Positions 32,901 to 63,776 of a stretch of 64,000 nt of DNA are shown here, piece after piece. The notes under the pieces are model-generated. The model was not told the origin of the DNA, did not search any database, and worked only from the letters and a program-made list of their open reading frames with translations. Position 1 is the stretch's first letter. Each line of letters starts with the position of its first letter. The stretch is from positions 248,001-312,000 of IMG/VR virus record IMGVR_UViG_3300023174_000039. One strand, written 5' to 3'. The position numbers and the translations under genes were made by a program.

Positions 32901-35900
32901 GCTATAGATACTTTGGGTGTATGTAAAAGTATTGAAACCAATTGTGGTAAATGCACTACCAACTGATCCTGGAGCCACCTGAAGTTTGTTGCCCGGTGCA
33001 GCCGAGGCAGGATTTTTAACAGCAATAGTCAGGTATCCTTTAGATACACTGGCCACAACGTTTGGTACAGTTTCTGTAATAGACTGTGCTAGACGTTGCA
33101 GGCTTGTTTGTTCAGCGGTGGGAAATAAAATTACAACGTCTTGATTGTTGACTCGTAGAGTATGTCCGGGTGTCAACACCGGATCCTGGTTTAAAGACAC
33201 TGTGCTACCGTACACACGGCTTTGATTTACATTGCGTTGTACACTTCCAGACTTCCAGCCATCTGTGCTGTCTTGTGGAGCACCAACATACAAACTGCAA
33301 CTGTACACACAGATGTCTACAGATTGTCCAAAGTTAGTGTATTCAGTCACAGTATTTTTGGTAATCTTTTGCATCTGTGTGAACTGGTTGGTTTCAATCT
33401 CAATTACATCGCCAGTTTGTAGATCAGAGTTAATGGTGATATCATTGCCGCTGACAGTGAAACTATTTGAAGCTCCAATGATACTGTTGTTTTGGTTTAC
33501 CAAGAATACATTATTAACAATAACACTTACAGGTGCAGTAACAGTTCCTAGTACTGTGAACATGGTTGAGCTTGGATCAGTTCCGTAATCAAACCGCTGA
33601 ACGTTGCGATCAAACACATACACACTACCAGCATCAACCTTGCCACTGATGTCTTCGTCTTTACATCCAATAATGACTTGTCGGCCATCAACTGTGGTAG
33701 TGACACTATAGCCAAACTGTGCATCGGCTGCTAGTCCGGCAACAGTCAATGTGTTAACATATTCAAAATAACTCTGAGCTTGTACTGAAATTAAGGTACC
33801 TGCGGCAGGATTGTTAACAAATGTCATGTCCTGTGTGCTGGTATTAAATGTGTAATCGATACCTGGACGTTGTAACACAGTATCAACATATACAGAGAAT
33901 GAATAGATGTTATCAACTGTGAAGAAATATTCATTTAGAGAAAATGTTGATGTTAGTGTAACAGGAGTGTATGCAATATTAAATGTTTCAACTTTTCCAC
34001 CTGCGCCCACAGATACCACTGTTAGCACTAAATTTGCTTGGCCGCCAAACTTGCTGGCTGCAAAAGTTATTGTATTTCCTACTGCATACCCAGTACCACC
34101 AGCAGTTACACCTACACCTCCTGAGATACTGCCTGGTTGTCCAACTTCATTACGAACTCGTCTGATAGTAAACTTAGCGCCTGTGCCTGAACCAGAAGTT
34201 GATGTTTGAGCAACGTTATAGTAATTGCCGCCATCAATAATTTTATTGTTATAACGGTGAATGTCAACCAACACACCAACTGCTGGCGCTGTTGCAAATG
34301 TCACTGTGGCCAATCCTGAGTCAACTGTGTAGTCTGTACCAAGTAATTGTTGTGTTCCGTCGAGTGTTACCAACAGCTGAGTAGCAGTGTTAATTTGTAT
34401 AGTTTGAGCTATGCTAAAAGATTTGGTGACTCCATCTCCTCTAGATTTAACAAATTGATCTTGCCAGTCTACTCGACCGTATGCATATACTTTGTTGGCA
34501 GCAGGTGCTCCTATGTATACCCAGCGTTCATCAGTGCTGATTGCTACGCTGTGTCCAAATAATCCTGATTCAGTGTTGTTGGGTGATACCAACAACTGCC
34601 ACGATACATAGGGAATTACACCCGGTTTGCCAAGATTTGGATCACGATAAATTATCGCGGCGTATCCAACATCTGCTTGGCTGGCAGGACCAAGACTCTT
34701 GCTTGCACCAGCAACTGCCCATGTTTGGTTGCCAAATTCCACGGCATTTCCAAATCCGCGAGCGCCGGTAGTGTCAAGAGTTAAAACAGCATCTCCGTTG
34801 GCCACTGGACTTACAGGTGCATACTGATCGCTGTAGTTTTTAACATAAACATACACAGCACCTTTTTCTGCACCAGTTGGGAATCCGTAGCGTGGGCTAC
34901 CTACCAAAGCGGCAAATCTATTACGGGCCTGTGACACGCTCTGTCCATACTGCTCTGTGGCATCTAGTAATTTAGGTGACAACTCAATCACTGTTGAAAA
35001 CTGATTTTCTTTTTGTAAAACTTCCCAATGCCCTGTTCCGTCATTGTCTACCCATAACTTAGCACCTGTTTGAATATCATTTGCATAAGGTAGATTTATA
35101 ATGTCACTGGCCTGTCTCACACGTTGAGTTTTTAATGTAAATCCAATACCAACGCCGTTGATAACTGTTTGGCCACCAGGGGTGAATGTATATGCAATAG
35201 TAACACGGTTAATACCTTGAACAGTTAGTACTTTGTATACACCATCAATTCTTGTGTCAAATTGTTTGATGATCAGTCGATCGCCAACTGACAAACCGTG
35301 TGGCTTGGTAAAGTTTACAATTGATGTTCCATCTAGGTTGTCACACACGTGGTCAATAAAACCTGGAATGTTGACGCAACGATAAATGTCCCAGTCGTAG
35401 TTGTTGACCTTGGCCACCCATACGGTGGCACCAACACTCACCAATCCTAAATTGGCAGCAATAGTAGATCTTGTTCCGAGATCAAAAGTAGCAATGTCAG
35501 CATCTTCAAGATTGACATATCCTGCATTTGGCAATGCAGTATCAGTTACTTGTGTGATTGTGGTAGGCAAAAAGTCTGGAGAAGTCAATTTATAACTTTG
35601 TCTCCAGACATTGTCTAATAAAATAGTCTGGTCTGCTTGACTTTGTTCTTGTGGTTGAATAACTTGTACTAAACTTGGATTTGCACTTAGCAATGCACGA
35701 TTTAGTTTTAGTTCAACAAAACTGCGGTTAGCATTGGCTCCGTATACTGCACGTTGTACCGCCCAGTTTTCATAGATCTGATAGTCTGCAGATTCTTTAC
35801 CAAGATTAGCATTGCTCAACAACTCTGCTGAAAGAATTGTGCCTTTGGTGCCCAAAAACTGTGAATAAACATTTACCTGGCTGACATCATCCAAATTCAG

Positions 35901-38900
35901 TGCTGCCATGTACTGGCGCGGACGGAATCCAATCAAGCCATAACTCAGCAAATCGTTGTCATTCTCAAGATTGGCACTGTTGATACTGTATGAATTTTGT
36001 AATTGGTTGGCCTTGTTTGAGATATTGGGCAATAATCCCAATGCAATCTGATTGTAATCGCTCTTGACCCACTTGTTGAAATCAAAGTCAGTACTGGGAT
36101 CAACAATGACCTGCGCACTCCAATACTGGTCTTTGTACTTGACAATTTGTCCTTTGCTGTACTTCTTGAGACCAGACCATTCTTCAACATTGTCTTGGTT
36201 TAGAATGAAACCTTGTGCATCCACAGTGCCATTCCACTCAGTGGTTGTTACACCAACAAAATTCAATCGGCTTTGTCTAGCACCTGTAATTGGTTGATAT
36301 ATTAAATCTCCAAACACTGATTGATTGTTCAACACAATCATGTGTTCAAAATTTGTGAATCTTAAATCAGCAAAACTTAAACTTTGATCAGTCAATGGCT
36401 GTAATGTCAATGTGTTATCAAGACGAACAATATTGATATTACGAGCAGGCAGCTCACGTTTGTTTTGATCTAGTATGACATTCTCGCTGGTCTGTGTGAC
36501 AATGCTGTCAACCACTGCGCCTGGTTTGGTAATTGTCAACGCACTGGCCAGTGGGTTGAGATTGATCAGGCAATTGTTTTCCCATCCTTGCTGACTCCAA
36601 TACAAGAACTCAACAACCATCTGGTCCCAGTCTAACTGATAGCCGTTGACTCTGTCATCAAACGTGAGTCCTTGATCTGTTAGTAGTTTGCCATAGCTCA
36701 ACAAGAAATCACAAACACTGGTTTGGTTAGTAAACACATACCCATAAGGAACTTGTGCCACTGTATTTGTATAAGTGGTAGGGACTCTCACAGTAACATC
36801 GCCAACTGTATATGGCTTTAATCTACCAGCTGACTGGCTTACTAAAATATTAAAGTACGGCTGAGTGGTTGAATATCCATATACAGCATAACCGCCTTCA
36901 ACAATTTGTATCACAACTGAGCTATAAATTAGTCGATCAAATGGCTGATTTTTGTACAGCAACAAATCATAACTTTCGTCAGGAATCAACAATGTTGCAT
37001 TCAAGCTGTTGGGGCTAGATTTTTCTGTGTATAATTTGATATACTGTTTGTCGGAATAACTAGCCAGTCTATAGCACAAGCGAACATCAATGCTGGCAAG
37101 ATCTGCTTCAAGGGCAGAGGTGCTGTTTATACCAGTGATACGATTATAGTCCACAATCCAGTTAATAAAACTAGCTTTGCTTGTGCCGTCACCGTACACT
37201 TGTATGCCATTGGCATCAAGTCGATACCGGTCATTGTAAAGAAATTGATCAAACTCTGCCTGATAACGATATAAATCTCTATCAGCGTACAGTGCGTAAA
37301 ACTTAGCTGGAATTGTCAATGCATACAATCTCATGACAGCAAATGGATAAGCACTAGAGTTCCGCCATGATGATTCAACAGGACTACCGTCGCCGGCACT
37401 CCAACTCTTTTGAAATGTTGTTTCGTTGTAGTTGCCAACTACACATTCAAACGGGCTTACTAAATTGCCTTCAGTATCAACTGGTATCACTTGAGTGAGT
37501 CCTGGACGCACATAGGCTGGTAGTACATATGTTCCTGCTGGATCTGCTACAATACCTGCTTCTAAATCATCCCATAGCACCATGTTTTCAGATGTGTAAG
37601 GTCCTACACCATATACAGTTTCCCACCAGGTTGGTTTGATACTGAATCCCAGCATCTCCCAAGGAGTTTTGGCAGGATCTTGTGTGTCATAAAAGTATCT
37701 ATAGATGCCACGCCAGGAGCCAATTAAGTTTTGACCAGTAGATAGTTTGTTTTGTGATCCACTATAGTTCCAGGAGAATTCGTTGTTTACAATATAATTT
37801 TGTGTGTTGTAATCAAGTTTGTTCCAGCCCACATAACTTAAAAAATCAACATTCAATATGGAATTAATTTCTTGTGATGAGTAACCGGTGTTGCGGAATT
37901 GTCCAGGAATAACATCACTGGCATTGATAGGCACTGGGTTGCCATCAAGTTTCAAGTTGTTGTAGATTCGAGTTTCAAACTCAAGTAACACTTGGTCTCG
38001 TACGTCACCAAATACTGGGGTTTGACTACCATCATGCCCAATGATAACTTCGCTGGAGCCGGATGTGGTGTCAATTGCAGTTATTACTGGACGGAATGTT
38101 GGGTACAGACCCATCTTGGTAGGAGTGTTTGGAACAAAACTTCCGTAAGTCGCTGAGTATTCTTGAACAGAGATAACATCGCCAATGGCCAATGGCACAA
38201 GTACTGTAATGCGTGGGCCATCTGTAGCAACAGTATAATCAATGCCACGAGTTAGTAATGCTTTGTTTTTGTAAACTAACAGTCCCAGATAGTTAGATGA
38301 TGTATAATTGTAAACTTGTACTGTATCAAATACATTGGTTGTGATCAAACTTACTGTGTAATTGTTTTCAATGTACACTGACCCTGATGGCAACATGTCT
38401 GACCAATAGAACGGATTAGATTCTAATCGTCCCAGAGTAATGTTGGCCATGGCCTCTACCAATATCTCTGCAGGAGTTTCTGTGTACAAAGTTAAATTGG
38501 TAACTTCGTTCATCAATAAGTCTTTGAACTTTTGGTATTCTCGCGAATTGTACTGCAAGGCAGCAAAAATATTATATTCTTTACTACGATTAAAATATCC
38601 AGCCAGTGTCAACGGACTACTTTGTTGTAGGATAATCAATCCATAAGGGCCAATGTTTCCAAGGTCTCGAGTGTTGTTGGCACCATTGATTTTACCAGAC
38701 AGTGTAATTAAGTTTTCACATATGGATTCGTAATGCGTACGAATGGTACCCAAAGTGAATACATCGCTGTTGCCATTGAGCGGGTTGTTCTCCAAATTGA
38801 TAGGCACTTGATAAAATGCCACTTGACTTGTTTGGTCGCTTAACACCAATACTTCCACAATATCGCCAATGGCATAGGTATTATCCAACGTGATAGTAGA

Positions 38901-41804: not shown

Positions 41805-44800
41805 TAAATGACTCCACTGCCTGGTGCTGTTCTTAGATTGGTGCTGGTCAGGGCTTCAATCACTTCTATATTAGTTATGTCTGCTGCATTCACAAAAATT
41901 TCGTTGGGCTCAGATCTAATCTCATACAAGTCACCAAAACTTTTCTGTGTGTCAAGTGGTACTAGCACTATTGAACTAATGATAGTGCCAAGTGTTCTGT
42001 GTAAGTATCCTGCTAGTTCAGAGAAATAAAATGTATCGCCAAAGTTCCATTTGTCAATGCTGAAATAGCTGTTCATTGCTGCCACCACACTGCTCTTGAT
42101 TTCACTGGTACTGGCTGTTGAGTTCTGTGCTTTGATCACTTTGATTGTGGCTCTCAGTTGTTGTGCGGCTTTGGCACCAAACAATGGTTTAAAGTTCACT
42201 GAGTTCAACACAATGTTGTCTGAAATCATTTTGTAATCTTGTAAGCCTTGGTATGCTGTTGACAATTCATCAATGGTAGGAACGTCAGGTTCTGTCACTG
42301 TACCTGTGGTGTCTTTGATCCAGTTCTGATATGCGGTATAATATGCCTGTGTAACCACGTACAGGTCAATGATGTTTGTGGTGCCAGGATCAATGCGATT
42401 GGTCAATGGCGAGTTGTGACGATACTGGAAATACAAGTTTTGTCTTCCTGCTCTTGCAATCCATCCTGACTGTTGAACCAATGTTCGTGTGCCAGCAACA
42501 TTGATACTGAGTAGATAAAACAAGTTTTGAGAATAAGCATAGAACACTTGTCCTGGACTCCACTCTGATTTTACCAATTCAATGTCGTCTAATGTAGCGT
42601 AGTCTGAGTTGACTACCCCTTCTTCAACCAACAAGTAACGTTGTAAGTTGTCAAAGTCCACTGTTTGCTGGAGGAACACCCAAGGTCCTGTGCTGGGAGT
42701 AGTTGGAACTGGTCCTACAATCTCACTAAAGAAATCTGGATTATCAGGTACACCATCATTGTCTGAATCGCGGAAACTTACCAAGACCTGGAAGTCATCA
42801 ACATATCCGTCACTCTCTACAGGCTGTCCAATGATATTCATGTAGATATCACTTTGCAACGGCTTGCTGTCAGTTGGTTGTGTATTCATTGCCAACACAT
42901 TGATAAAGTCTTTGATAATTGTGCCAGTTCGACTGTCGTAGACCAATTGGTCATCATAGAAGAAGAAACGTGTTTGTAACACACTGCCAAAGTTATATGC
43001 AAGTCCGCGGAAAGTCACTGTGTAGTTTTGATTTTCAACCACAAACTGTGCTAGCCAACTGGCATCCTTGTTTGTGCCTGATGTATCCCCGGCATATGTT
43101 TGACTCCACGTAGCATTGGCGTTGAGATTTGTACTGGTGATCAAATACCATGTACCTGGAGGAATAGTTACACCTTGTGCTGTGACGAGTTCTGTACTGG
43201 CGTAACCAATACCAAAATTGCGGAACAATTCAATTTGATCGCCCATTTGTTGCTCTAGTGACAATGGCAAGTCTGTGATAAACACAGGAATGATGCTGTC
43301 AACCACTGCTCCTGTTGGCACAAAGTTATTGAGAGTTACTGGGCCAGTGCCTGATGGTAAGTTGCCAATACCGCCATTGTACCCGTCTCCCACGATGGCT
43401 TGTGGAGCTGCCCATATCTCAGAACTTTCTTCTGGTTTAGTAGGTGGCCCTGGTTGCAATCTGTTGTTACGATCAAAATGGTATTCTATCCCGTTGATTG
43501 TTGGGGCAGTGAATTTAATAATGCTGCCGACTTGTACGTATTTAAAAACCGTCGTGGTGCTATTACCAACCGGAATAGCATTTCCGTTGGCATTTTCAAA
43601 GTACCCAGTGGTTTCGTTGGCCAGTGTGGTACTCTGTTGCCAGGTACTTAATGCTGTGGCTGAATCTACAACGTTGACTGTGGGTCTAGGAAAGTTGGCA
43701 TAATAAAATTGTTTCATTGTGGCTTTGCCCACTTGTGGTTGAGCAGAGTTAGTAACAAAGTCAGCAATTTCGTTGCGGTTGATCCACGAGAACAATACTG
43801 TGGGGAGAATATTTTGTTCCCACAACGCACCGTCACTGGAGAAAGAGTTAGTTGATGAATACTTGCCAGTATTGTCCACTAGATCCAGGTACCGGCTGGT
43901 ACCAATTGAACTACGGTTTAGAGCCTTGGATTTAATAATACTATTGTAGGCAGTGTAAGGAAACAGATTGTAGTCTTCACCATTGACCATACGGTTTTGT
44001 GTGTAGTATCTGGCAGGAGCACGTTGCTTGATTGCGTCAATTGTTTCACGTGCTTGTGCATTGCTCACTGGTTGAGTGATGCCACAAGTGAATGTGATTG
44101 TTTGAATGTTACCATTGCGGTCAGTGTAACTGATTGGCAATGTAACGTTTTGCATTTCTTCAGGATTGATAATGTACTGCAATCCGTTTGATGCACGAGT
44201 ATAGCAACGGAAGATACCAACTGGAATCTCTGAGAACACTCCGTCGCCAAAAACTAGAGTAATTTGGTCATTGCTACGACTGGTGGTAGAATAAATAGGA
44301 CGCAATGCCACAGTTTGTTCTGCGGCTGCTGTGTATACACTTTCTACATACTGCCATTCGCGGTTGATATTGCCTAGATTGGTAAGTTCAAACAACCAAC
44401 GGTCGGTGTTGTTGACGCCTTCTACATTGATGTTTACAGTGCGGTTGCTTGTGCGTTCCGCCAAGTTAAAATCTGTGTTCTGCAATGTGCCTTGCTTGAA
44501 CATAAAGAAGTAGCCGGTGTTGGCAGAACTAAATCCCAATTGATCATTACGGAACAACACGTTGAAACTTGTGTTTGGAACTGGTGGTGGCTCATATAGA
44601 TAGTCTCGGCCTACACTGGTGGATGTGGTGGCTTCAAATGGCATATTAACACCATCAACTGTGGCAGTATAAGGGATCACTGGCAAAAAGCCTGGCACTA
44701 GATTCACTGCATACTCAGCAGTATCCACACCTAGTATTGTTTGTTTGTTGCCTGGACGACCAACACGTTGAGTATCAACCAATGAAGCATTGATAATTGC

Positions 44801-45271
44801 TGTGAACTGTTCTTGCCAGTCTGGATTTGTAGGATCTGCCCAGTCAACTGTGACGTTAGATAAGTTCACTCCGTTATAGTCAACAACATTTTCTGTTGTG
44901 GTAACATTGAATACTTTTAACAGGCCTTGAGCGGCTGTGTTGCGCTTGGGACTGTAGCTTACTAGGTTAGCAAGACGCACAACAGAATCACGACGTTCTG
45001 CTGTGTCCAAATAATTCTCACGAGTATTAAGGTCAGTACGGAAAGCAAGCGATTGCCCCATAAACGCAATAATGTCTAACAGCGCAATAAATTCACTTGA
45101 CTCAATGTAGTCATTGAATGTTTCTGGATAGTACAAACGTAGATAATCTACAAAACTCTTGCGTAGAGTTTCAAAATCGTAGCTTTGGAAGTCTGCTTCT
45201 CTATACGTCTGATAGATTTGCTTCCAATCTTCTACTCCAAATATTGCCGTTTGTCTAGTGGTTGTTGCCAT
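41804..45271 (-). CDS. Baseplate wedge subunit, T4 gp6-like
   Basis: DFETLRKSF, LLDIIAF, RENYLDTAERRDSVVRLA..VSY.PKR, FGDG, ETIDAIKQRAP..Y.TQNRMV..EDY. Confidence 0.85.
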   Translation of the reverse strand: MATTTRQTAIFGVEDWKQIYQTYREADFQSYDFETLRKSFVDYLRLYYPETFNDYIESSEFIALLDIIAFMGQSLAFRTDLNTRENYLDTAERRDSVVRLANLVSYSPKRNTAAQGLLKVFNVTTTENVVDYNGVNLSNVTVDWADPTNPDWQEQFTAIINASLVDTQRVGRPGNKQTILGVDTAEYAVNLVPGFLPVIPYTATVDGVNMPFEATTSTSVGRDYLYEPPPVPNTSFNVLFRNDQLGFSSANTGYFFMFKQGTLQNTDFNLAERTSNRTVNINVEGVNNTDRWLFELTNLGNINREWQYVESVYTAAAEQTVALRPIYSTTSRSNDQITLVFGDGVFSEIPVGIFRCYTRASNGLQYIINPEEMQNVTLPISYTDRNGNIQTITFTCGITQPVSNAQARETIDAIKQRAPARYYTQNRMVNGEDYNLFPYTAYNSIIKSKALNRSSIGTSRYLDLVDNTGKYSSTNSFSSDGALWEQNILPTVLFSWINRNEIADFVTNSAQPQVGKATMKQFYYANFPRPTVNVVDSATALSTWQQSTTLANETTGYFENANGNAIPVGNSTTTVFKYVQVGSIIKFTAPTINGIEYHFDRNNRLQPGPPTKPEESSEIWAAPQAIVGDGYNGGIGNLPSGTGPVTLNNFVPTGAVVDSIIPVFITDLPLSLEQQMGDQIELFRNFGIGYASTELVTAQGVTIPPGTWYLITSTNLNANATWSQTYAGDTSGTNKDASWLAQFVVENQNYTVTFRGLAYNFGSVLQTRFFFYDDQLVYDSRTGTIIKDFINVLAMNTQPTDSKPLQSDIYMNIIGQPVESDGYVDDFQVLVSFRDSDNDGVPDNPDFFSEIVGPVPTTPSTGPWVFLQQTVDFDNLQRYLLVEEGVVNSDYATLDDIELVKSEWSPGQVFYAYSQNLFYLLSINVAGTRTLVQQSGWIARAGRQNLYFQYRHNSPLTNRIDPGTTNIIDLYVVTQAYYTAYQNWIKDTTGTVTEPDVPTIDELSTAYQGLQDYKMISDNIVLNSVNFKPLFGAKAAQQLRATIKVIKAQNSTASTSEIKSSVVAAMNSYFSIDKWNFGDTFYFSELAGYLHRTLGTIISSIVLVPLDTQKSFGDLYEIRSEPNEIFVNAADITNIEVIEALTSTNLRTAPGSGVI

Positions 45272-55956: not shown

Positions 55957-56973
55957 ATGAGTAATCTATTTAAAAAAGCCGCAATCTTCACAGACATCCA
56001 CTTTGGTCTCAAGTCAAACAGCACATTGCACAACGAAGACTGTTTGGCTTTTGTCAAATGGGCCACTGCCAAGGCCAAGGCAGAAGGCTGTGACACTTGT
56101 CTGTTTCTAGGTGATTGGCACAACAATCGATCAAGCCTAAACATTGTCACACTAAGCTACAGTCTGCGAGCATTAGAACACATGAATGCCAACTTTGATC
56201 GTGTGTTTTTCATTCCTGGCAATCATGACTTGTATTATCGTGACAAGCGTGATATACAAAGTGTAGAATGGGCCAAACACTTGCCAAACATTGAAATATG
56301 CAACGACTGGTTCAGTGATGGCAATGTTATCATTGCTCCTTGGTTGTGTGGCGACGATCATAAACGTATTCCCAAACTAAAAGGTCAGTACATGTTTGGG
56401 CATTTTGAACTGCCTGGATACATGATGAATGCCATGGTAGAGATGCCAGATCACGGAGAGATCCGCAGGGAAGACTTCAACAACTTTGATCATGTGTTCA
56501 CTGGTCACTTTCACAAACGTCAGACCAAAAAGAACATTACCTACATTGGTAACTGCTTTCCGCACAACTATGCTGATGCCGGTGACGATGATCGTGGATT
56601 GACTATTTTAGAGTGGGGGCAAGATCCGGTGTATCATGCGTGGCCCGCACAACCCAAATATCGGGTGTTAGGGTTAAGCTCGGTAATTGACAATGCTGCC
56701 ACACTGCTTGCTCCTGACATGCATGTTCGTGTACAATTAGACATTGAGATCTCATACGAAGAAGCCAACTTCATTAAAGAAACATTTATCAAGCAGTATC
56801 AACTGCGAGAAATGGCATTGATTCCTAACAAGAACTCCGGGGTTGACACAGACATGGCACCCGGAGAAGTAAAGTTTGAATCTGTTGATCAAATTGTTAC
56901 AGACCAACTCACCAACATTGAATCTGAATTTTACGATCCAAAACTGTTGCTAAAGATTTATCAAAACTTATGA
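55957..56973 (+). CDS. Recombination endonuclease subunit gp47 (Mre11/SbcD-like)
   Basis: Metallophosphoesterase motifs DIHFG, GDW, GNHD, GHFE, GHFH. Confidence 0.93.
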   Translation: MSNLFKKAAIFTDIHFGLKSNSTLHNEDCLAFVKWATAKAKAEGCDTCLFLGDWHNNRSSLNIVTLSYSLRALEHMNANFDRVFFIPGNHDLYYRDKRDIQSVEWAKHLPNIEICNDWFSDGNVIIAPWLCGDDHKRIPKLKGQYMFGHFELPGYMMNAMVEMPDHGEIRREDFNNFDHVFTGHFHKRQTKKNITYIGNCFPHNYADAGDDDRGLTILEWGQDPVYHAWPAQPKYRVLGLSSVIDNAATLLAPDMHVRVQLDIEISYEEANFIKETFIKQYQLREMALIPNKNSGVDTDMAPGEVKFESVDQIVTDQLTNIESEFYDPKLLLKIYQNL

Positions 56974-57680
56974 GATTTCAAGACACACGTTTCTGGAAAA
57001 ATTACAGTGAGTACACTCGTATTACACTGAACTCGTCTATGCGATCAACCGTTGATGCTGTAATTTACTGGCGGTTGTTAAATTATTTTAAGTTTAATAA
57101 GTTTTTAGAAATTGGGGTATATCAAGGATTAACTACTGGATTGATATTTGACACAACACCTACTGCTCATGTGACTGCAATTGATCCAACAGATCGGTTG
57201 GCATTATTTTATAAAAATTATCCAGAATACCAATCACAGTTTACTTTTATTAACCAACCAAGTCAAAAAGTTGAGTTAGGTGACACCATGTATGATTTTA
57301 TTCTAGTCGATGGCGACCATTCCTACGAGATAGTGGTAGATGATATTTTAAAATGTTTACCAAGGCTGGACACTAGTGGGGTGTTAGCAATTGACGATTA
57401 CAAACTGCCGGGGGTTGCAAAAGCAATAGAATACCTGTATAATTTAAAAACTGACTGGGTTCCATTTTTACGATCTGAACAAACTGAATTTTGGCATCAT
57501 TGCAGGTGTGATCGTGGTGACTTTTTAGATTCCTTGTTCACTGATTCAATTAGTAAATTTATTTTTATTAGAAACACAGTTGACCAATATAACAATACCA
57601 TATGCTCTGCAACCACACTAGGCATATTTACTGATCAAACTGAATACTTTGATATGGCCTTACAGCACTATAACATATGA
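56970..57680 (+). CDS. Class I SAM-dependent methyltransferase (Methyltransf_24-like)
   Basis: LEIGVYQG, AIDP, YDFILVDGDHSYE...D...L...G.LAIDDY. Confidence 0.8.
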   Translation: MRFQDTRFWKNYSEYTRITLNSSMRSTVDAVIYWRLLNYFKFNKFLEIGVYQGLTTGLIFDTTPTAHVTAIDPTDRLALFYKNYPEYQSQFTFINQPSQKVELGDTMYDFILVDGDHSYEIVVDDILKCLPRLDTSGVLAIDDYKLPGVAKAIEYLYNLKTDWVPFLRSEQTEFWHHCRCDRGDFLDSLFTDSISKFIFIRNTVDQYNNTICSATTLGIFTDQTEYFDMALQHYNI

Positions 57681-59758
57681 TCCAAATTAAAAACTTGACT
57701 GTTAAAAACTTCATGAGTGTGGGCAATGCCACACAAGGTATTGACTTTGACCGTAACGACCTTACACTTGTGCTGGGCGAAAACTTGGATCTAGGCGGTG
57801 ACGGATCACGCAATGGCACAGGCAAGACCACTATCATTAATGCGTTGAGTTATGCTTTGTATGGACAAGCACTATCAAACATTCGCAAAGATAATCTTGT
57901 GAACAAAACCAACGGCAAGAATATGTTGGTTAGTCTAGACTTTGTTGTGAACGGGCAAGAATACAAGATCGAACGTGGGCGCAAACCCAATGTGTTGCGG
58001 TTTTATGTCAACAATCAAGCGCAGGTATCTACAGACGAAGCGCAAGGCGATAGTCGAGAAACACAAGATGCAATTGAACGGATTATGAATATGAGTCATG
58101 ACATGTTCAAACATGTGCTGGCGCTAAACACTTACACCGAACCGTTCTTGAGTTTAAAAGCCAATGACCAGCGCAACATAATCGAGCAGTTGTTGGGTAT
58201 CACTTTGCTGAGTGAACGTGCAGATGCCATCAAAGAACTTAATCGACAGACCAAAGATGGCATCAGTCAAGAAGAATTTCGTATTCGTGCTGTGCAAGAA
58301 GCCAACAAACGCATCGAAGAACAGATTGAAAGTTTGAAACGCAGACAAGTACTCTGGCAGAAGAAGTACGATAGTGATGTAGCATATCTCGTGGCACAAT
58401 ATGATGATCTAGACAAGATTGATATTGAAGTAGAATTACTAGCTCACAAAGATCTGGCCTTGTGGACCACAAGAAAACAACAACAAGATGCGTATACTGC
58501 ACTTGTTGGTCGCCAAACTGCTTGGAAGCAAAAACAACAAAAAGATATCAGTGAGTTGGAATCAGGTTACAACAATCTCAGTCACATTGACATTACTGCA
58601 GAACTACAAGCACATGCGGACTTGGCTGCTCACACACAACAAGCCAAGGACATTGCTGACCTTGAAAAACTCATTGCTAGATGTGTTACCGACGAGGCAA
58701 AAGAACAGAAAACAATTGATAAGCTCAAAACCGAAATTGATGAATTAAAAAATCACAAGTGTTATGCTTGTGGGCAAGACTTTCACGACGCCAATCATGA
58801 AACAGTGCTAGCAACAAAAGAAAAGGCTCTACAAGAAGCCGCACTGCAAGCATTGAGTACCAATGGTCAGTGGATAGAAAATACAGATGCATTGGCTGCA
58901 TTAGGTGTGCTAGGTACCAAACCCACCACACACTACCGTACAGAAACAGAAGCAATTCGACATTCAAGTGAACTAGAAAATATTCAACACAAGATTGATG
59001 CCAAACGTGCAGAAACAGATCCCTATGCTGAACAACTAGCAGAACATGCCCTTGTAGAAGTCGGCACACAACCTGTTACACATTACGACACAGAGGCTCA
59101 AGCTGTTGAGCACCGCAGTCGTATGAACACATTGCTGACACAGATTGCTACCAAAGGTGAAGAGAAGGATCCTTACACAGAACAGATTGTTGAAATGCAA
59201 CAACAAGCATTGCAGACTGTGAGTTACGATACACTCAACGATCTTACCAGATTGCAAGATCATCAAGACTTCTTGCTCAAACTATTGACATCAAAAGATT
59301 CATTTGTGCGCAAGAAAATTATTGATCAGAACTTGAGTTACCTGAACGCACGACTCACACACTATCTAGATCGCATTGGATTGCCACACACTGTGAAGTT
59401 CCAGAACGATCTAAGTGTAAGCATTGAAGAACTGGGTCGTGAACTAGATTTTGATAACTTATCACGTGGTGAACGCAATCGATTAATCTTGAGTATGTCA
59501 TGGGCCTTCCGTGACGTATGGGAAAGTCTGTACTCACCAATCAACTTGTTGTTTATTGACGAGTTAATTGACAACGGTCTAGACACACAAGGCGTAGAAA
59601 ATGCCCTGGCTTTGCTGAAGAAGATGAGTCGCGAACGCCACAAGAGTATCTGGCTTGTAAGCCATAGAGACGAGCTTGCAGGGCGTGTGGAAAACATTCT
59701 CAAAGTTGTAAAAGAGAATGGCTTTACCAGCTACAACACCGACATAGAACTGGCATAA
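57677..59758 (+). CDS. Recombination ATPase subunit gp46 (Rad50/SbcC-like)
   Basis: NFMSVG, Walker A NGTGKTT, zinc hook CYAC, signature LSRGE, Walker B LLFIDE, VSH. Confidence 0.93.
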   Translation: MIQIKNLTVKNFMSVGNATQGIDFDRNDLTLVLGENLDLGGDGSRNGTGKTTIINALSYALYGQALSNIRKDNLVNKTNGKNMLVSLDFVVNGQEYKIERGRKPNVLRFYVNNQAQVSTDEAQGDSRETQDAIERIMNMSHDMFKHVLALNTYTEPFLSLKANDQRNIIEQLLGITLLSERADAIKELNRQTKDGISQEEFRIRAVQEANKRIEEQIESLKRRQVLWQKKYDSDVAYLVAQYDDLDKIDIEVELLAHKDLALWTTRKQQQDAYTALVGRQTAWKQKQQKDISELESGYNNLSHIDITAELQAHADLAAHTQQAKDIADLEKLIARCVTDEAKEQKTIDKLKTEIDELKNHKCYACGQDFHDANHETVLATKEKALQEAALQALSTNGQWIENTDALAALGVLGTKPTTHYRTETEAIRHSSELENIQHKIDAKRAETDPYAEQLAEHALVEVGTQPVTHYDTEAQAVEHRSRMNTLLTQIATKGEEKDPYTEQIVEMQQQALQTVSYDTLNDLTRLQDHQDFLLKLLTSKDSFVRKKIIDQNLSYLNARLTHYLDRIGLPHTVKFQNDLSVSIEELGRELDFDNLSRGERNRLILSMSWAFRDVWESLYSPINLLFIDELIDNGLDTQGVENALALLKKMSRERHKSIWLVSHRDELAGRVENILKVVKENGFTSYNTDIELA

Positions 59759-60768
59759 TGTTAGCTACTTGGCACTTTCACATTGAGATCTCCAGCAAGT
59801 GTACCTTGCAGTGTCCTCGTTGTGCTCGTCAAGAAGTACCCAACAGTCTTGTGAATACAGAACTAGACCTAGAATTTTTTAAACGTAATTTTACTCCAGA
59901 GTTTATCAAAAACAATGTAGAGAAGATTACGTTTTGTGGCGACGATGGTGATCCTATATATGCACATGATCTAATTCCTGTTATAGAATATATCAAAAGC
60001 GTCAAACCTGTTGAGTTTGTGATTGTCACCAATGGATCGCATAAAAAAACTGCATGGTGGACAGAACTAGGCCAATCTCTAGATTCCAGCGACAGTGTGC
60101 ATTTTAGTGTAGACGGATATGACAATGACAGCAATAACCTGTATCGTGTCAACAGTGATTATGATAGTGTTGTTGATGGCATAAAAACTTTGCGAGCATC
60201 AAGCGATTGCAAGATTGTGTGGGCCGCTATTGCTTTCAAATTCAACGAAGAACAATTAGACTCCATGAAAGAGTTTGCACAATCTATAGGTGTTGACCGG
60301 TTCCAGTTAACCAAGAGTACCAAATTTGGCAGTGTGTATCCTTCATATGGCATAAACGATCCATTGCAACCCAGTGTAAAATACATTAGCAGTACTCACC
60401 GATTTGAACGTGAGGCAACGGTGTTTACAGATACAGGATCCCAAGACTCTGTATCCCAGACAAACATACAATTATTCAAACAAACAACAAGTCGCAATGG
60501 TATTACTCCATTGTGCATGATAGGCAACAAAGGACTGTACATTGATGCCCGCGGCAGGTTATTTCCCTGCTGTTGGGTAGCTAACCGATACAATCACAAT
60601 TCAGACTGGCAACAACAGGCAACAAACTTTGATTTACACAACAAAACATTAATCAATGTACTTGCAGATACATTTTGGTCTACAGAATTTCAAACATTCA
60701 AGTGGCAAGAATGCCAAAGCAAGTGCAAAACTTCAGTAGTAGACGAGAAATACGCAACTTCTTGGTAA
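59758..60768 (+). CDS. Radical SAM protein with C-terminal SPASM/twitch-like domain
   Basis: CTLQCPRC, TNG, C...GRLFPCCW...CQSKC; paralogue of 5174..6289. Confidence 0.9.
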   Translation: MLATWHFHIEISSKCTLQCPRCARQEVPNSLVNTELDLEFFKRNFTPEFIKNNVEKITFCGDDGDPIYAHDLIPVIEYIKSVKPVEFVIVTNGSHKKTAWWTELGQSLDSSDSVHFSVDGYDNDSNNLYRVNSDYDSVVDGIKTLRASSDCKIVWAAIAFKFNEEQLDSMKEFAQSIGVDRFQLTKSTKFGSVYPSYGINDPLQPSVKYISSTHRFEREATVFTDTGSQDSVSQTNIQLFKQTTSRNGITPLCMIGNKGLYIDARGRLFPCCWVANRYNHNSDWQQQATNFDLHNKTLINVLADTFWSTEFQTFKWQECQSKCKTSVVDEKYATSW

Positions 60769-60808: not shown

Positions 60809-61237
60809 ATGACATGGCTATATCAAGATACCCCAATTGAGATGTTGCCCGATGAGTGTGTTGGATTTGTTTACTTGATTACAAATAATCTCACTGGACG
60901 CAAGTACATAGGCAAAAAATTAGCAAAATTTAGCAAAACAACATACAAGACAGTTAAGCAAAAGAATGGCATCAAGAAGAAGAAAAAGATACGATCAAAG
61001 GTCGACTCAGACTGGAGAGAGTACTATGGGTCAAGCCCAGAATTAACTTCAGACGTAATCAAACTAGGCACCGAAAACTTTACCAGAGAAATACTTTTTT
61101 ATTGCAACTCTAAATCGGAATGTAGTTACATTGAAGCAAGAGAACAATTTGCAAGAAGAGTATTAGAATCACAAGATTATTACAATGGCCACATACAAGT
61201 GCGTGTGCATGGCAGTCATATTATAGGCAAATTATGA
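60809..61237 (+). CDS. Stand-alone GIY-YIG family nuclease
   Basis: GFVYLITNNLTGRKYIGKK, YYGS, FTREIL, catalytic-type Glu in YIEAREQ, YYN. Confidence 0.8.
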   Translation: MTWLYQDTPIEMLPDECVGFVYLITNNLTGRKYIGKKLAKFSKTTYKTVKQKNGIKKKKKIRSKVDSDWREYYGSSPELTSDVIKLGTENFTREILFYCNSKSECSYIEAREQFARRVLESQDYYNGHIQVRVHGSHIIGKL

Positions 61238-61503
61238 CCAAACTTGATTGGAACCGACAACCTTGGATCAGTACAATGAACTCAGAGTACTGGACAAATC
61301 CAAAGACCGGGTTTGACAAGGCTTGGCACGAGCAACAAAAACACAAAAAAGCACAGACAGAGAAAGAAAAGCAGTTTTTAGGCATACATGCAACACACGA
61401 GTTAGATCGCATTCAGCTAGAGTACGGTCCTCATGCAGGCAAACTTATTTGTAAAACTTGTAAAAATAAATTTCTAAAGTGGCTTCCAAAGGAAGCATTT
61501 TAA
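61234..61503 (+). CDS. Small hypothetical protein, possible Zn ribbon
   Basis: ATGA overlap with the nuclease gene; H...H...CKTC motif. Confidence 0.65.
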   Translation: MTKLDWNRQPWISTMNSEYWTNPKTGFDKAWHEQQKHKKAQTEKEKQFLGIHATHELDRIQLEYGPHAGKLICKTCKNKFLKWLPKEAF

Positions 61504-61504
61504 T

Positions 61505-61900
61505 CTAACACTGAAGGTTAGCGGGCCAGTTTGTAATACCGCTGTGGAAAAACCGGGGAATAACCGGACACGTAACATATTGAAGCACTCCCGTCAGTAG
61601 ATCTGACTATCCTGAAAAATTGGAAGTGAGTCTGAGAGCAGAACCCTACGCTCAACGCTTTGATATAGTATGAATGTTAGCATACGAGAACACCGGCTAT
61701 AAAAACTTAAACACTAGGAACGAGGTTTAAGGTAGCAAGAGATTGCAATGTCGACGTAGGTTGGGAAAGGTCAGAGCCCAGTAGCACACGGTGTATAAAA
61801 ATACCTACTTCCAATGTCGTGGCTGTGACAACTCACATGAAGACAAAAACGGAACCGCGCAAAACGGTTCCGTCTGACTAAAACAATCTACATGAATACT
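61505..61900 (+). ncRNA. Candidate large structured non-coding RNA of unknown family
   Basis: Nested helices attggaagt(61619-27)/acttccaat(61807-15), tctga/tcaga and cctacg/cgtagg, plus at least six local hairpins, in the only long ORF-free gap. Strand inferred from a GAGA tetraloop and G-U pairs. Confidence 0.6.
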
Positions 61901-61929: not shown

Positions 61930-61971
61930 ATTGACGAGCAAAGCGAGTCAATAGAACTTCGTAGAAGTTCT
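61930..61971. terminator. Two tandem hairpins at the convergence of the + and - operons
   Basis: attgac...gtcaat (61930-52) and agaacttc-gta-gaagttct (61953-71), abutting the stop of the nucleosidase gene. Confidence 0.5.
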
Positions 61972-62531
61972 TAAACAGTTACTCCAAGTTCAAGTAGTTT
62001 AGCAATAAAGAACTTTTCTCCATTGGATACAGATTGTTTCCAAGAGTCATGAGCTTGATCATCTGCTTGATCAGTAATGTATTTGAAGCAACGGAATTTG
62101 ACCTTGTACCGTAAACATGCCTTGGCAATTGCATATGCCTCCATATCAACTACGTCTGCAGGTATGTCAAGTTTGGGATTCATCACAAAGTTATCTCCGG
62201 TACTGCATGTGAGTCCATTGGTACCTGTGCTCAGTATGATATCATCTTCAAATGGAGTTTGTCCGTCTGCACATCCCATGGCCTGACACGTGATATCTCT
62301 TTGTACAAATTGAGTACATTCATGTAGACCGGGACCAGCAGTAATACCACCTGCTGTGCCTATATTGATAATGCGATCTGGTTGATAACGTTCGATCACT
62401 TGTGCGGCAGTTAATGCCGCATTGACCTTGCCAACCCCGGTATAGAACACATTCATCATGTGTCGTAGGTTAGGAGCCTCGCTGGGCAAGGCTATCAAGA
62501 TCACAGTTTTCATACAAAGGTATCTGGCCAA
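61971..62531 (-). CDS. mtnN: 5'-methylthioadenosine/S-adenosylhomocysteine nucleosidase (probable start 62513, MKTVILIAL)
   Basis: AL.SE, TGVGKVNAA, IINIGTAGG, STGDNF, VDMEAYAIA, KYITDQAD. Confidence 0.85.
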   Translation of the reverse strand: MARYLCMKTVILIALPSEAPNLRHMMNVFYTGVGKVNAALTAAQVIERYQPDRIINIGTAGGITAGPGLHECTQFVQRDITCQAMGCADGQTPFEDDIILSTGTNGLTCSTGDNFVMNPKLDIPADVVDMEAYAIAKACLRYKVKFRCFKYITDQADDQAHDSWKQSVSNGEKFFIAKLLELGVTV

Positions 62532-62845
62532 TCACGGAACAATGCGTGTTGAATTGTTCCTGACACAAATTGATTGAAACTTTTGTGTTTGACTTCTAGT
62601 TCACCTGCAAGAGGTGCAACACGTTTGAATGCCAAGTCCATTTGGCCCATGTCTTTGAACTCCATCAAGATCATCCATTCTGGCATGTTGGCAATACTTC
62701 TAAAGCCCATCTTGCATCTGGTAATGCGATAGTCTTCTAGTTTGCCTTCTGATTTCAAATGATCAAAGAAACTCTTCATGCCGTTAACCCAGTCCAAGTC
62801 TGAGATGTCGCCTTCTTTATCTGCCCAAATTGTGTAAATGTCCAT
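62510..62845 (-). CDS. Small alpha/beta protein (DUF6614-like)
   Basis: HLKSEGKLEDYRITRCKMG...EFKDMGQMDLAF...H pattern; family recalled from memory only. Confidence 0.5.
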   Translation of the reverse strand: MDIYTIWADKEGDISDLDWVNGMKSFFDHLKSEGKLEDYRITRCKMGFRSIANMPEWMILMEFKDMGQMDLAFKRVAPLAGELEVKHKSFNQFVSGTIQHALFRDWPDTFV

Positions 62846-63276
62846 TATAGTGGTCCTAGTATTTCAAAACCTTCAAGGTCCTGTTTATACAGATGTGCCT
62901 GATCCAAGTACAGGTACTGGAATCCGCGCTCTCTGTAGATTGCACATTCTGTTTGTAAGCTCGTAATACCCAACCGTAGTCGGGGCTTGCGATAGTTCCA
63001 AGCAAATTGTGCGGCTAATAAATTTTTGTCGTCGTAACGTTTCATTATTGAAAACGCTGCCAGTTCGCCGTTGTCTCGGTATCCTATTAGATCCACACCT
63101 GGTTCTGTAAATTGGCTGTCAAACAACGGCATCACACTGGCAAAGTGTTTGTAGGTACAATAGGTTCTGTATATGTCCTGTAGTTCTGCAATATTGGGCT
63201 GAGTGATATAAAACCAGTCAACTGTGGGTTTGTATGTTGTTTTTTCCAAATTGATTCTAGCAAACTGATAGGTCAT
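62845..63276 (-). CDS. GNAT-fold protein resembling the C-terminal domain of arginyl-tRNA-protein transferase (ATE/Bpt)
   Basis: YRDNGELAAF...RLGITSL..E....RERGFQYLYL...YK...GFE. Confidence 0.55.
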   Translation of the reverse strand: MTYQFARINLEKTTYKPTVDWFYITQPNIAELQDIYRTYCTYKHFASVMPLFDSQFTEPGVDLIGYRDNGELAAFSIMKRYDDKNLLAAQFAWNYRKPRLRLGITSLQTECAIYRERGFQYLYLDQAHLYKQDLEGFEILGPL

Positions 63277-63776
63277 GTTCTTGGGTCTTTTCTATGTTGA
63301 AATAAGCCAGTGAGATACTCTTCGGGCCAGGTGTCATAAAATCCTCGCTTGGCCATTAACTGTGCTTTTGAATCAAGATCGCTCAGACTTTGTACTAATG
63401 CAAGCGCATATGTACCTTGATTCATACAGATTCCGTTGACAATTTCAACATCGTTGGGATGATCTTCAAGTGTTAACAAATCTGCATTTAACAAAAAATC
63501 TCTGTTGGCCTGATCTAAGCTACTTGCAAACAGGTCGTGTGGCCATTCTTTAGGATCATATGCATACACAATAACTTCTTTGTCGCCCATGCCATACCGG
63601 GCACGATTTTTAAGATCAAAGTAAGGATCAGCACCAATGAACACATCGTAGCTGTTTTTGAGTCTTGAGCTACGAGCATATGGGCAAGGAGGGAAGTTGC
63701 CCAGGGCAGGATGCGGAACTTCTACAAAGTTCACAATCCACTGCTCAATATCTCGTTTAACTTGATCTATATCCAT
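63273..63776 (-). CDS. Hypothetical protein (DUF1415-like)
   Basis: W...FV.......PCPYAR N-terminus and a DHP motif. Confidence 0.5.
   Translation of the reverse strand: MDIDQVKRDIEQWIVNFVEVPHPALGNFPPCPYARSSRLKNSYDVFIGADPYFDLKNRARYGMGDKEVIVYAYDPKEWPHDLFASSLDQANRDFLLNADLLTLEDHPNDVEIVNGICMNQGTYALALVQSLSDLDSKAQLMAKRGFYDTWPEEYLTGLFQHRKDPRT

What the first reader, a model, noticed from the sequence alone, without database searches (positions are those of the whole stretch)
60809..61900. Minimal GIY-YIG nuclease + small Cys/His protein + structured RNA: possible ribonucleoprotein module
Seen: the 142-aa nuclease is a bare catalytic domain with no C-terminal DNA-recognition module, but with a very basic insert (KTVKQKNGIKKKKKIRSK). 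It is coupled to an 89-aa CxxC protein, and the structured region starts right at that gene's stop. Known: homing GIY-YIG enzymes carry separate DNA-binding domains, and some compact nucleases (IscB, TnpB) take specificity from an adjacent RNA. Inference, speculative: the RNA binds or directs the nuclease, or the nuclease processes a structure at this locus during replication initiation.
Basis: inference. Interest (0 to 1): 0.75.

Follow-up and report, generated by a model that had tools for sequence, protein, structure and literature searches.

The report
Phage nuclease gene beside large RNA
A freshwater jumbo phage carries a small GIY-YIG nuclease gene followed by a real, roughly 400-460-nt intricately folded RNA that is a new relative of the little-known Polynucleobacter-1 RNA, but the evidence points to neighbouring genes rather than an RNA-guided nuclease.

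Summary
All three described parts are there. There is a 142-aa bare GIY-YIG nuclease (60809-61237). An overlapping 89-aa His/Cys protein follows (61234-61503). A structured RNA on the + strand starts 2 nt after its stop (61505 to about 61970).

The RNA is real: 77 non-redundant homologues show many compensatory pairs and two pseudoknot-type crossings. Rfam does not recognise it (class A).

In this phage lineage every nuclease gene with enough downstream DNA is followed by one of three interchangeable RNA classes:
- class A;
- a new class B;
- class C, whose 5' domain is Rfam Polynucleobacter-1, already reported downstream of this gene family in 2010.

All classes share a 3' module with two direct repeats that change in parallel. 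This is unexplained.

Several results argue against an RNA-guided nuclease:
- Class A also occurs in near-complete 30-kb phages with no such nuclease, apparently behind a promoter of its own.
- The nuclease family occurs in about 500 isolated phages; the three I checked have no such RNA.
- RNA class switches at least 24 times on the nuclease tree.
- No guide-like variable end exists.

Best reading: a conserved stand-alone nuclease beside an autonomous large ncRNA of unknown function. Binding was not testable.

The parts
60809..61237 (+). Stand-alone GIY-YIG nuclease gene (142 aa), here called giy. GIY motif G19-Y22, YIG motif Y33-G35. R93, E94 and N126 are invariant.
   Evidence: PF19835 E 6.3e-33 and phrog_447 E 6.7e-38. 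Invariant columns in 27 homologues. Model pLDDT 86; best PDB match is the I-TevI catalytic domain, prob 0.93, TM 0.61 by target.
60926..61006 (+). Basic beta-hairpin insert of the nuclease (residues 40-66, including KTVKQKNGIKKKKKIRSK).
   Evidence: Strands E40-50 and E56-66 in the model. Conserved in the lineage; 5-11 residues shorter but still basic in P-SSM2, Melnitz and S-SRM01.
61234..61503 (+). ORF2: 89-aa small His/Cys protein, probably zinc-binding, overlapping the nuclease stop by ATGA. An optional gene, found only together with class A RNA.
   Evidence: Invariant H52, H55, P66, H67, K70, C73, C76, W83. No Pfam or PHROG family. 199 uncharacterised metagenomic homologues. No fold match. 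Context is always nuclease-ORF2-RNA.
61505..61895 (+). Class A structured RNA: the conserved 391-nt block used for the alignments.
   Evidence: nhmmer finds it in 114 of 118 loci fetched with an 18-nt RNA motif. 77 representatives; covariation. No Rfam match. Unique in the genome.
61505..61567 (+). Nearly invariant 5' domain: hairpins S1 (61505-61521), S2 (61521-61542) and S3 (61553-61567), joined by CUGUGGAAAAA.
   Evidence: S3 is 94% paired against 63% shuffled, with 68 both-side-changed cells.
61577..61666 (+). Long-range helix S4 (61577-61586 with 61657-61666). It encloses a variable domain (hairpin Hd 61593-61607) that is replaced or deleted in divergent members.
   Evidence: Top covarying pair 81-154: GC 41, CG 15, AU 12, UA 8. 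S4 is 96% paired against 82% shuffled. Alignment.
61690..61808 (+). Pseudoknotted core. S6 (61690-61699 with 61782-61794) crosses S9 (61756-61760 with 61804-61808). Inside it lie S7 (61706-61731), the variable hairpin S8 (61732-61750) and S10 (61761-61781). PK (61753-61755 with 61770-61772) also crosses S9 and S10.
   Evidence: S6a 99.7% paired with 105 both-side-changed cells. PK 99.6% paired with 52. S9 99% paired with 14. S7 93% paired with 141.
61816..61842 (+). Direct repeat 1. Its 3' half, X1 (ACUCACAUGAAG), lies at 61831-61842.
   Evidence: X1 changes in parallel with X2 across lineages and classes.
61850..61878 (+). Hairpin S13 (61850-61856 with 61866-61872), followed by the invariant GUCUGAC.
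   Evidence: 99.6% paired. GGUUCCGUCUGAC is invariant.
61886..61897 (+). Direct repeat 2, X2 (AUCUACAUGAAU). UCUAC (61887-61891) can pair with GUGGA (61544-61548). Homology to class B loci resumes here.
   Evidence: PX2 99% paired, but nearly invariant, so without compensatory support.
61930..61970 (+). 3' tail shared by all classes. Hairpin AUUGAC-GAGCAAAGCGA-GUCAAU (61930-61952), then terminator-like hairpin GAACUUCGUAGAAGUUC (61954-61970), which abuts the stop of the convergent gene at 61971.
   Evidence: The stem covaries UUGAC/GUCAA with UUGAU/AUCAA. Fold.

Best explanation
The locus holds two neighbouring but functionally separable genes, not an RNA-guided nuclease.

(1) The nuclease, here called giy, is a stand-alone GIY-YIG nuclease. 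Its family is about 140 aa long and single-copy in T4-like phages. It sits next to the Mre11/Rad50 (gp47/gp46-like) genes and needs no RNA.

(2) The RNA is an autonomous, roughly 390-465-nt pseudoknotted non-coding RNA (class A), made from the + strand at the 3' end of that operon. It is a divergent relative of the RNA whose 5' domain is Rfam's Polynucleobacter-1 motif. In this jumbo-phage lineage the RNA gene is effectively a core gene. It exists in three exchangeable classes (A, B, C), swapped by recombination between conserved flanks: the nuclease 3' end on one side, the second repeat and tail hairpins on the other.

Inferred, not shown: the RNA acts in trans. A compact class-specific core presents a shared 3' module, in which two near-identical sequence motifs (X1 and X2) next to hairpins engage two copies of one partner, or the same partner twice.

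ORF2 is an optional accessory of class A. In many relatives its last codons and stop lie inside the RNA's first hairpin.
For: RNA reality and strand.

Three classes at one locus:
- A 17, B 45, C 23 of 85 informative nuclease loci.
- Class B is itself structured: 38 of 87 predicted pairs are compensatory, with 273 G-U cells against 12 A-C cells.
- Class C is RF01718 at 75-122 bits.
- Classes A and C share colinear blocks.

Autonomy of the RNA:
- Near-complete 30-kb phages carry class A and have no nuclease homologue (positive control).
- Those phages show a promoter-like TTATACTAAATAGTAT and a GGCA-repeat leader upstream of the RNA.
- In 10 class B loci the RNA lies 0.7-1.9 kb downstream of the nuclease gene, far enough for inserted genes.
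- ORF2 lies between the nuclease gene and the RNA in 25 of 92 class A loci.

Autonomy of the nuclease:
- 507 phage isolates carry it once each. Three examined lack the RNA.
- In three loci a PDDEXK_15 nuclease takes its place.

Cassette exchange: at least 24 class changes on the nuclease tree (shuffled mean 50, least possible 2). The window's nearest nuclease (96% identical) carries class B.

Parallel repeats.

Metatranscriptome contigs cover the nuclease gene and the RNA of relatives.
Against: - Within the lineage the nuclease and an RNA co-occur in every informative locus. The order nuclease-then-RNA survives much gene turnover around it, which could reflect a functional tie.
- A different nuclease fold at the same position keeps ORF2 and the RNA.
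- The nuclease carries a lysine-rich beta-hairpin that could bind RNA.
- No experiment or transcript-end data exist. The metatranscriptome signal could be DNA carry-over.
- All nuclease loci come from one viral lineage, so co-occurrence and independence are both hard to weigh.
- The trans-acting two-site model is inference only. No partner was found.
Confidence: 0.45

Rival explanations
1. Ribonucleoprotein. The RNA binds the nuclease (and ORF2), through the shared 3' module with its two repeats, and inhibits, activates or localises it. It would be a regulator or scaffold, not a programmable guide.
For: 85 of 85 co-occurrence in the lineage. 79 of 92 class A loci lie behind the nuclease gene. 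The 3' module is the only part common to all classes. A basic beta-hairpin sits on the nuclease. The pairing survives replacement by a PDDEXK nuclease.
Against: Class A works in complete small phages without the nuclease. The nuclease family is widespread, and the three isolates examined lack the RNA. There is no co-evolution with RNA class. The basic insert is not specific to RNA-linked members. Binding could not be computed.
Confidence: 0.17
2. Cis-acting 3' UTR element of the nuclease operon mRNA. It would control mRNA stability, termination or translation of the upstream genes. Polynucleobacter-1 was listed as possibly cis-regulatory.
For: The RNA starts 0-16 nt after the upstream stop codon in most loci. 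It is on the same strand and no promoter was found in the window. It ends in hairpins at a convergent gene boundary. The ORF2 stop lies inside hairpin S1 in many relatives. Weinberg 2010 table: cis-reg 'y'.
Against: A 400-nt pseudoknotted fold, more conserved than the flanking proteins and in three swappable classes, is far more than a stabiliser needs. In small phages it follows unrelated genes at 90-355 nt with a promoter-like site of its own. Genes are inserted between the nuclease gene and the RNA.
Confidence: 0.15
3. Selfish or catalytic RNA. It would be a ribozyme or intron-like element whose two repeats are twin reaction sites (cleavage/ligation or excision of the 54-nt hairpin segment), spreading with help from breaks made by the neighbouring nuclease.
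For: Size, pseudoknots and invariant junction nucleotides. The repeats keep identical sequence in the eight positions that follow their fixed CUC (repeat 1) or UCU (repeat 2) triplets. Transfer between phage types and frequent cassette replacement beside a nuclease gene.
Against: No Rfam ribozyme or intron model matches, even at E up to 10. There are no flanking exons or split gene, because the upstream gene differs among loci. The helix order does not fit group I. No reverse transcriptase is encoded in the genome.
Confidence: 0.1
4. DNA-level element: a replication origin or protein-binding iterons processed by the nuclease.
For: Two direct repeats about 54 bp apart that co-vary like iterons. 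The element neighbours recombination genes.
Against: Compensatory changes and the G-U against A-C asymmetry show selection on one RNA strand. The site lies between convergent genes. The repeat motif is not enriched in the genome. The nuclease sequence does not track the repeat sequence.
Confidence: 0.04

Closest known systems
Polynucleobacter-1 RNA motif (Rfam RF01718; Weinberg et al. 2010, PMC2864571)
   Same: It has the same genomic place. Class C loci of this phage lineage match it at 75-122 bits immediately after the nuclease gene. The 2010 supplement already says the motif lies downstream of a gene family with possible homology to P-SSM2 PSSM2_218, and I show that this is a homologue of the nuclease here (36% identity, E 6e-19). 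The window's RNA shares colinear blocks with class C (AAGCACUC, ACUAUCCU, AUAUAGUAUG..UGUUAGC) and the whole 3' module. Function is unknown in both.
   Different: The Rfam model (141 nt) covers only the 5' domain of class C. It does not detect the window's RNA even at E up to 10. Class A has a different 5' domain and core. The motif had not been seen in any phage genome, nor tied to a GIY-YIG nuclease, to a roughly 450-nt full-length RNA, or to alternative classes.
Stand-alone GIY-YIG nucleases of T4-like phages (PF19835 SegE_GIY-YIG, phrog_447, cyanophage cluster T4-GC213; I-TevI catalytic domain)
   Same: Catalytic-domain sequence motifs and fold. Phage-encoded.
   Different: There is no C-terminal DNA-binding module as in I-TevI or SegE. 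The gene is single-copy and syntenic beside Rad50/Mre11 rather than sporadic like homing endonuclease genes. It is often mis-annotated as 'NAD synthetase'.
OMEGA systems (IscB/TnpB with omega RNA; the HEARO RNA)
   Same: A compact nuclease gene sits next to a large structured RNA.
   Different: In OMEGA systems the nuclease is RuvC/HNH, and the RNA carries a variable guide at one end and co-evolves with the protein inside a transposon. Here the nuclease is GIY-YIG. There is no variable guide and no transposon ends. RNA classes swap independently of the protein, and the RNA also lives without it.
Large ornate phage-associated RNAs of unknown function (GOLLD, ROOL)
   Same: Several hundred nucleotides, complex folds, phage-borne, no known function (my own knowledge; bioRxiv 10.1101/2024.12.08.627333, listed and not read).
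   Different: No sequence or model similarity. Smaller. It has a distinctive repeat-hairpin-repeat 3' module and fixed synteny with a nuclease gene.

Membership tests
GIY-YIG nuclease superfamily (PF19835 SegE_GIY-YIG) | Profile match above the curated cut-off | tested here: met
   114.1 bits against a cut-off of 25, E 6.3e-33, profile positions 1-123 of 123.
GIY-YIG nuclease superfamily (PF19835 SegE_GIY-YIG) | GIY and YIG motifs plus conserved Arg, Glu and Asn | tested here: met
   G19-V21-Y22, Y33-I34-G35, R93, E94 and N126 are invariant in 27 homologues. Assigning them catalytic roles is by analogy with I-TevI.
GIY-YIG nuclease superfamily (PF19835 SegE_GIY-YIG) | GIY-YIG alpha/beta fold | tested here: inconclusive
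   The best PDB matches are I-TevI catalytic domains (prob 0.85-0.93, TM 0.58-0.62 by target), but Foldseek E is only 0.14.
Homing endonuclease (I-TevI / Seg type) | Separate C-terminal DNA-binding domain | tested here: not met
   At 142 aa the Pfam domain covers residues 3-129. Family profile phrog_447 is 148 positions long.
Homing endonuclease (I-TevI / Seg type) | Sporadic, mobile distribution among related genomes | tested here: not met
   Same position after Rad50 in all loci. Single copy in complete genomes and in 507 isolates.
RNA-guided nuclease (IscB/TnpB-like) | Adjacent structured RNA with a hypervariable single-stranded guide at one end | tested here: not met
   An adjacent RNA is present, but its ends are conserved. 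The variable parts are hairpin S8 and the domain enclosed by S4. No match of the intergenic RNA elsewhere in the genome.
RNA-guided nuclease (IscB/TnpB-like) | Obligate co-occurrence and co-evolution of nuclease and RNA | tested here: not met
   At least 24 class switches on the nuclease tree. RNA without the nuclease in complete small phages. Nuclease without the RNA in the isolates examined.
RNA-guided nuclease (IscB/TnpB-like) | RNA-dependent activity | not testable with these tools
   Complex prediction did not fold the protein-RNA job. A biochemical assay is needed.
Rfam RF01718 Polynucleobacter-1 | Covariance-model score at or above gathering (37 bits) | tested here: not met
   No hit in the window at gathering or at E up to 10, nor in the whole genome. 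Class C relatives score 75-122 bits.
Rfam RF01718 Polynucleobacter-1 | Location downstream of the GOS11034 / PSSM2_218 gene family | tested here: met
   The nuclease is homologous to PSSM2_218, and the RNA lies downstream of it.
Group I intron | Match to the intron model, flanking exons of a split gene, group I helix order | tested here: not met
   No RF00028 hit at E up to 10. Upstream genes differ among loci and none is split. An S6/S9 crossing exists, but hairpin S10 lies where P7 should abut P3', and no P8 is present.
Retroelement template RNA (retron or DRT-like) | A reverse transcriptase encoded with the RNA | tested here: not met
   No PF00078 match in the 95%-complete genome. None seen next to the RNA in any locus.

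The most novel reading that the evidence does not exclude
The RNA is the regulatory or specificity subunit of a nuclease complex. This would be the first RNA partner of a GIY-YIG enzyme (interchangeable with a PD-(D/E)XK one), with the two co-varying repeats as twin docking sites. Alternatively, it is a new ribozyme class whose two identical sites are its reaction sites.
Probability: 0.15. Interest if true: 0.9.

Novelty: new variant of a known kind. Interest (0 to 1): 0.6.

Why it matters
Large RNAs with complex, pseudoknotted folds and no known function are rare, and several have led to new biochemistry. This work makes five advances.
- It places the orphan Polynucleobacter-1 motif in 330-350-kb freshwater T4-like phages.
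- It shows that the motif is only the 5' domain of one of three exchangeable RNA classes of about 400-460 nt.
- It identifies the long-noted upstream gene as a GIY-YIG nuclease.
- It uncovers a shared 3' module whose two repeats evolve in concert.
- It gives a clear answer to the RNA-guided-nuclease idea and a defined set of constructs to test.

If the RNA does partner with the nuclease, or is catalytic, it would be a new kind of phage ribonucleoprotein or ribozyme.

Tried and rejected
- **Group I intron with the nuclease ORF in a loop.** Rejected: upstream genes differ among loci, nothing is split, there is no Rfam hit, and my first guess at a P7 pairing was overturned by covariation.
- **A short 3' exon ending 'Ser-Thr-stop' at TCTACATGA.** Rejected: the same motif recurs inside the RNA as X1, and the variant ACAGAA has no stop.
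- **Reverse-transcription template with repeats for template jumping.** Rejected: no reverse transcriptase is encoded.
- **A third strand inside the RNA complementary to X1/X2 (a conformational switch).** None found consistently.
- **X as a genome-wide regulatory motif.** Not enriched: 65 copies on both strands against about 55 expected.
- **X tracking the nuclease start region.** It does not.
- **The hairpin at 61847-61875 as a minus-strand terminator.** The T-run is absent in most relatives, so the hairpin is S13 of the RNA.
- **Hammerhead or K-turn readings of the tail hairpin and of the repeats.** The sequences do not fit.
- **blastn of the locus against 50,697 phage records.** No match.
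- **Complex prediction of the nuclease dimer plus the 3' module.** Not folded, so it is no evidence either way.
- **ORF2 fold search.** Nothing significant.

Full report
**What is there.** The window is part of a 331,654-bp IMG/VR virus record, 95% complete. Its gene order is Mre11-like (55957-56973), a 236-aa ORF, Rad50-like (57677-59758), a radical-SAM gene (59758-60768), the finding, and then a block of genes on the opposite strand.

ORF 60809-61237 encodes a 142-aa protein, here called giy. It matches PF19835 SegE_GIY-YIG end to end (E 6.3e-33) and the 148-position phage family phrog_447. The GIY and YIG motifs and R93, E94 and N126 are invariant in 27 homologues. The model (pLDDT 86) is closest to the I-TevI catalytic domain, and it shows the basic insert as a beta-hairpin spanning residues 40-66.

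ORF2 (61234-61503) overlaps the nuclease stop by ATGA. It is a member of an orphan family of 80-100-aa proteins with invariant H52, H55, H67, C73 and C76. It has no Pfam, PHROG or fold match.

**The RNA is real.** Folding the window sequence alone is unimpressive (z about -2.1 on both strands), and Rfam finds nothing. Comparison with relatives settles it. Loci fetched through the nuclease and through ORF2 showed a roughly 390-nt block. It is conserved at 76-88% nucleotide identity even where ORF2 is only 50-60% identical or absent.

An 18-nt motif from the RNA then fetched 118 further viral loci, and 114 of them hold the RNA. In 77 representatives under 97% identical, eight of the nine helices with compensatory support are 93-100% paired (S10 is 82%), against 63-82% when the partners are shuffled. 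They carry dozens to more than a hundred both-side-changed cells.

S6 crosses S9, and a 3-bp helix (PK) crosses S9 and S10, so the core is pseudoknotted. G-U pairs, which would be A-C on the other strand, place the RNA on the + strand. The conserved RNA begins at 61505. Its tail hairpins, shared with relatives, run to 61970, against the stop of the convergent gene.

Metatranscriptome contigs of relatives cover both the nuclease gene and the RNA. They do not prove transcription.

**Three classes and a known relative.** Nuclease loci that seemed to lack the RNA carry another conserved element of about 330 nt at the same place (class B). It is also structured: 38 of 87 predicted pairs are compensatory, with 273 G-U cells against 12 A-C cells.

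The remaining loci match Rfam RF01718 Polynucleobacter-1 at 75-122 bits right after the nuclease gene (class C).

| Downstream RNA class | Nuclease loci |
|---|---|
| A (window type, not in Rfam) | 17 |
| B (new, not in Rfam) | 45 |
| C (5' domain is Polynucleobacter-1) | 23 |
| Locus too truncated to tell | 3 |

These counts cover all 88 nuclease loci.

The 2010 description of Polynucleobacter-1 noted that the motif lies downstream of a gene family with possible homology to PSSM2_218 of cyanophage P-SSM2, and that it had not been seen in any sequenced phage. PSSM2_218 is a homologue of the nuclease here (36% identity, E 6e-19).

Class A shares colinear sequence blocks with class C. All three classes share a 3' module made of repeat 1, a hairpin, repeat 2 and the tail hairpins. 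The window's RNA is therefore a new, Rfam-invisible class of an RNA superfamily of which only one 141-nt domain was known.

**The unexplained repeats.** X1 (ACUCACAUGAAG, 61831-61842) and X2 (AUCUACAUGAAU, 61886-61897) flank hairpin S13 and the invariant GUCUGAC. Across lineages and classes they keep a fixed difference (CUC in X1, UCU in X2). The next seven positions change together: ACAUGAA, GCAUAAU, ACAGAAA and ACAUAAA in class A; AGAUAAU and AGAUGAU in class B; GGAUAAU and GGAUGAU in class C. Several of these variants recur in unrelated branches.

In a noisier, anchor-only scan, 69% of modules were identical over six positions, against 12% for shuffled pairings. The first halves of the repeats can pair with separate internal strands: UCUAC of X2 with GUGGA, and ACUCAC of X1 with GUGAGU. 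The latter pairing is weak and is missing in divergent members.

No common complementary strand exists inside the RNA. The motif is not enriched in the genome, and it does not follow the nuclease start site. Something requires the two sites to be the same. A partner bound twice, or twin reaction sites, are the simplest ideas. Neither is shown.

**Is it a nuclease-RNA machine?** For: co-occurrence in the lineage is complete, and 79 of 92 non-redundant class A loci have the nuclease within 900 nt upstream. Of these, 42 are direct, 25 go through ORF2 and 12 have a gap. In three loci a PDDEXK_15 nuclease replaces the GIY-YIG gene, while ORF2 and the RNA stay.

Against:
- Nine or ten class A loci lie in another kind of phage, after tail-fibre-like and unknown genes. 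Two of those records are 98% and 100% complete at about 30 kb and contain no nuclease homologue. The same search finds single copies in complete 345-347-kb genomes.
- In those small phages the RNA follows a promoter-like TTATACTAAATAGTAT and a leader of GGCA repeats.
- The nuclease family is single-copy in 507 isolated phages, mostly Kyanoviridae. Melnitz, S-SRM01 and P-SSM2 have no such RNA after it.
- On a 132-sequence nuclease tree the RNA class changes at least 24 times, and the window's nearest nuclease (96% identical) carries class B.
- The RNA has no variable single-stranded end.
- The basic insert is shared, in shorter form, by RNA-less homologues.

The protein-RNA prediction was not run by the tool.

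**Conclusion.** The RNA-guided reading is not supported.

The best account is a conserved stand-alone nuclease of the recombination gene cluster, next to an autonomous large ncRNA. The RNA gene is core to this jumbo-phage lineage, comes in three recombining classes, and has moved into small phages. Its function is unknown. A regulatory nuclease-RNA contact, a 3' UTR role and a catalytic RNA remain possible, at lower probability.

Noticed in passing
L001:1979-2420 and 44 other loci (class B): A second conserved structured RNA of about 330-440 nt, not recognised by Rfam, occupies the same slot after the nuclease gene in the window's closest relatives. 38 of 87 predicted pairs are compensatory.
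   Followed up: partly
L115:2170-2279, L106, L150, L125, L159 (upstream of class A RNA in small phages): A promoter-like TTATACTAAATAGTAT lies about 50-60 nt upstream, followed by a leader with 3-5 (A)GGCA(A) repeats ending AGGCAAAUCAU just before the RNA. The nuclease 3' end in the window (AUAGGCAAAUUAUGA, 61223-61237) resembles the last repeat.
   Followed up: no
L018:1748-1755, L007:3682-3689 and others; window 61501-61521: In many relatives ORF2 ends ...PNT*, with its last codons and its stop (the UAA in the loop of hairpin S1) inside the RNA. Translating ORF2 would therefore unfold S1. In the window the stop lies 2 nt before the RNA.
   Followed up: no
L095:8216-8725, L195:1181-1702 (-), L104:1520-2071 (-): A PF24608 PDDEXK_15 endonuclease replaces the GIY-YIG gene between Rad50 and the ORF2-like gene plus RNA. 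This is a non-homologous nuclease at the same position.
   Followed up: partly
window 59758-60768, and loci: The space between Rad50 and the nuclease gene is a variable slot holding zero, one or two radical-SAM genes (22-79% identical to the window's). The slot after the RNA variably holds the PNP_UDP_1-like gene (61971-62531, minus strand).
   Followed up: no
window 26994-41804 (-) and 41804-45271 (-): A giant 4936-aa ORF is followed by a 1155-aa ORF on the minus strand. I did not examine them.
   Followed up: no
window 61482-61496: A terminator-like hairpin GCUUCCAAAGGAAGC plus AUUUUAAU sits inside the last ORF2 codons, just before the RNA start. It is present only in ORF2 variants ending LPKEAF.
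   Followed up: no
L007:4054-4065 and other class A loci: The spacer before repeat 2 forms a 12-bp DNA palindrome TAGATTAATCTA in some lineages. The window has TAAAACAATCTA instead.
   Followed up: no
window 62510-63776 (-): The conserved convergent block comprises DUF6614 (E 8e-22), a 143-aa protein with a weak ATE_C-like match, and a 167-aa phrog_28122 protein. It is syntenic in nearly all related loci.
   Followed up: no
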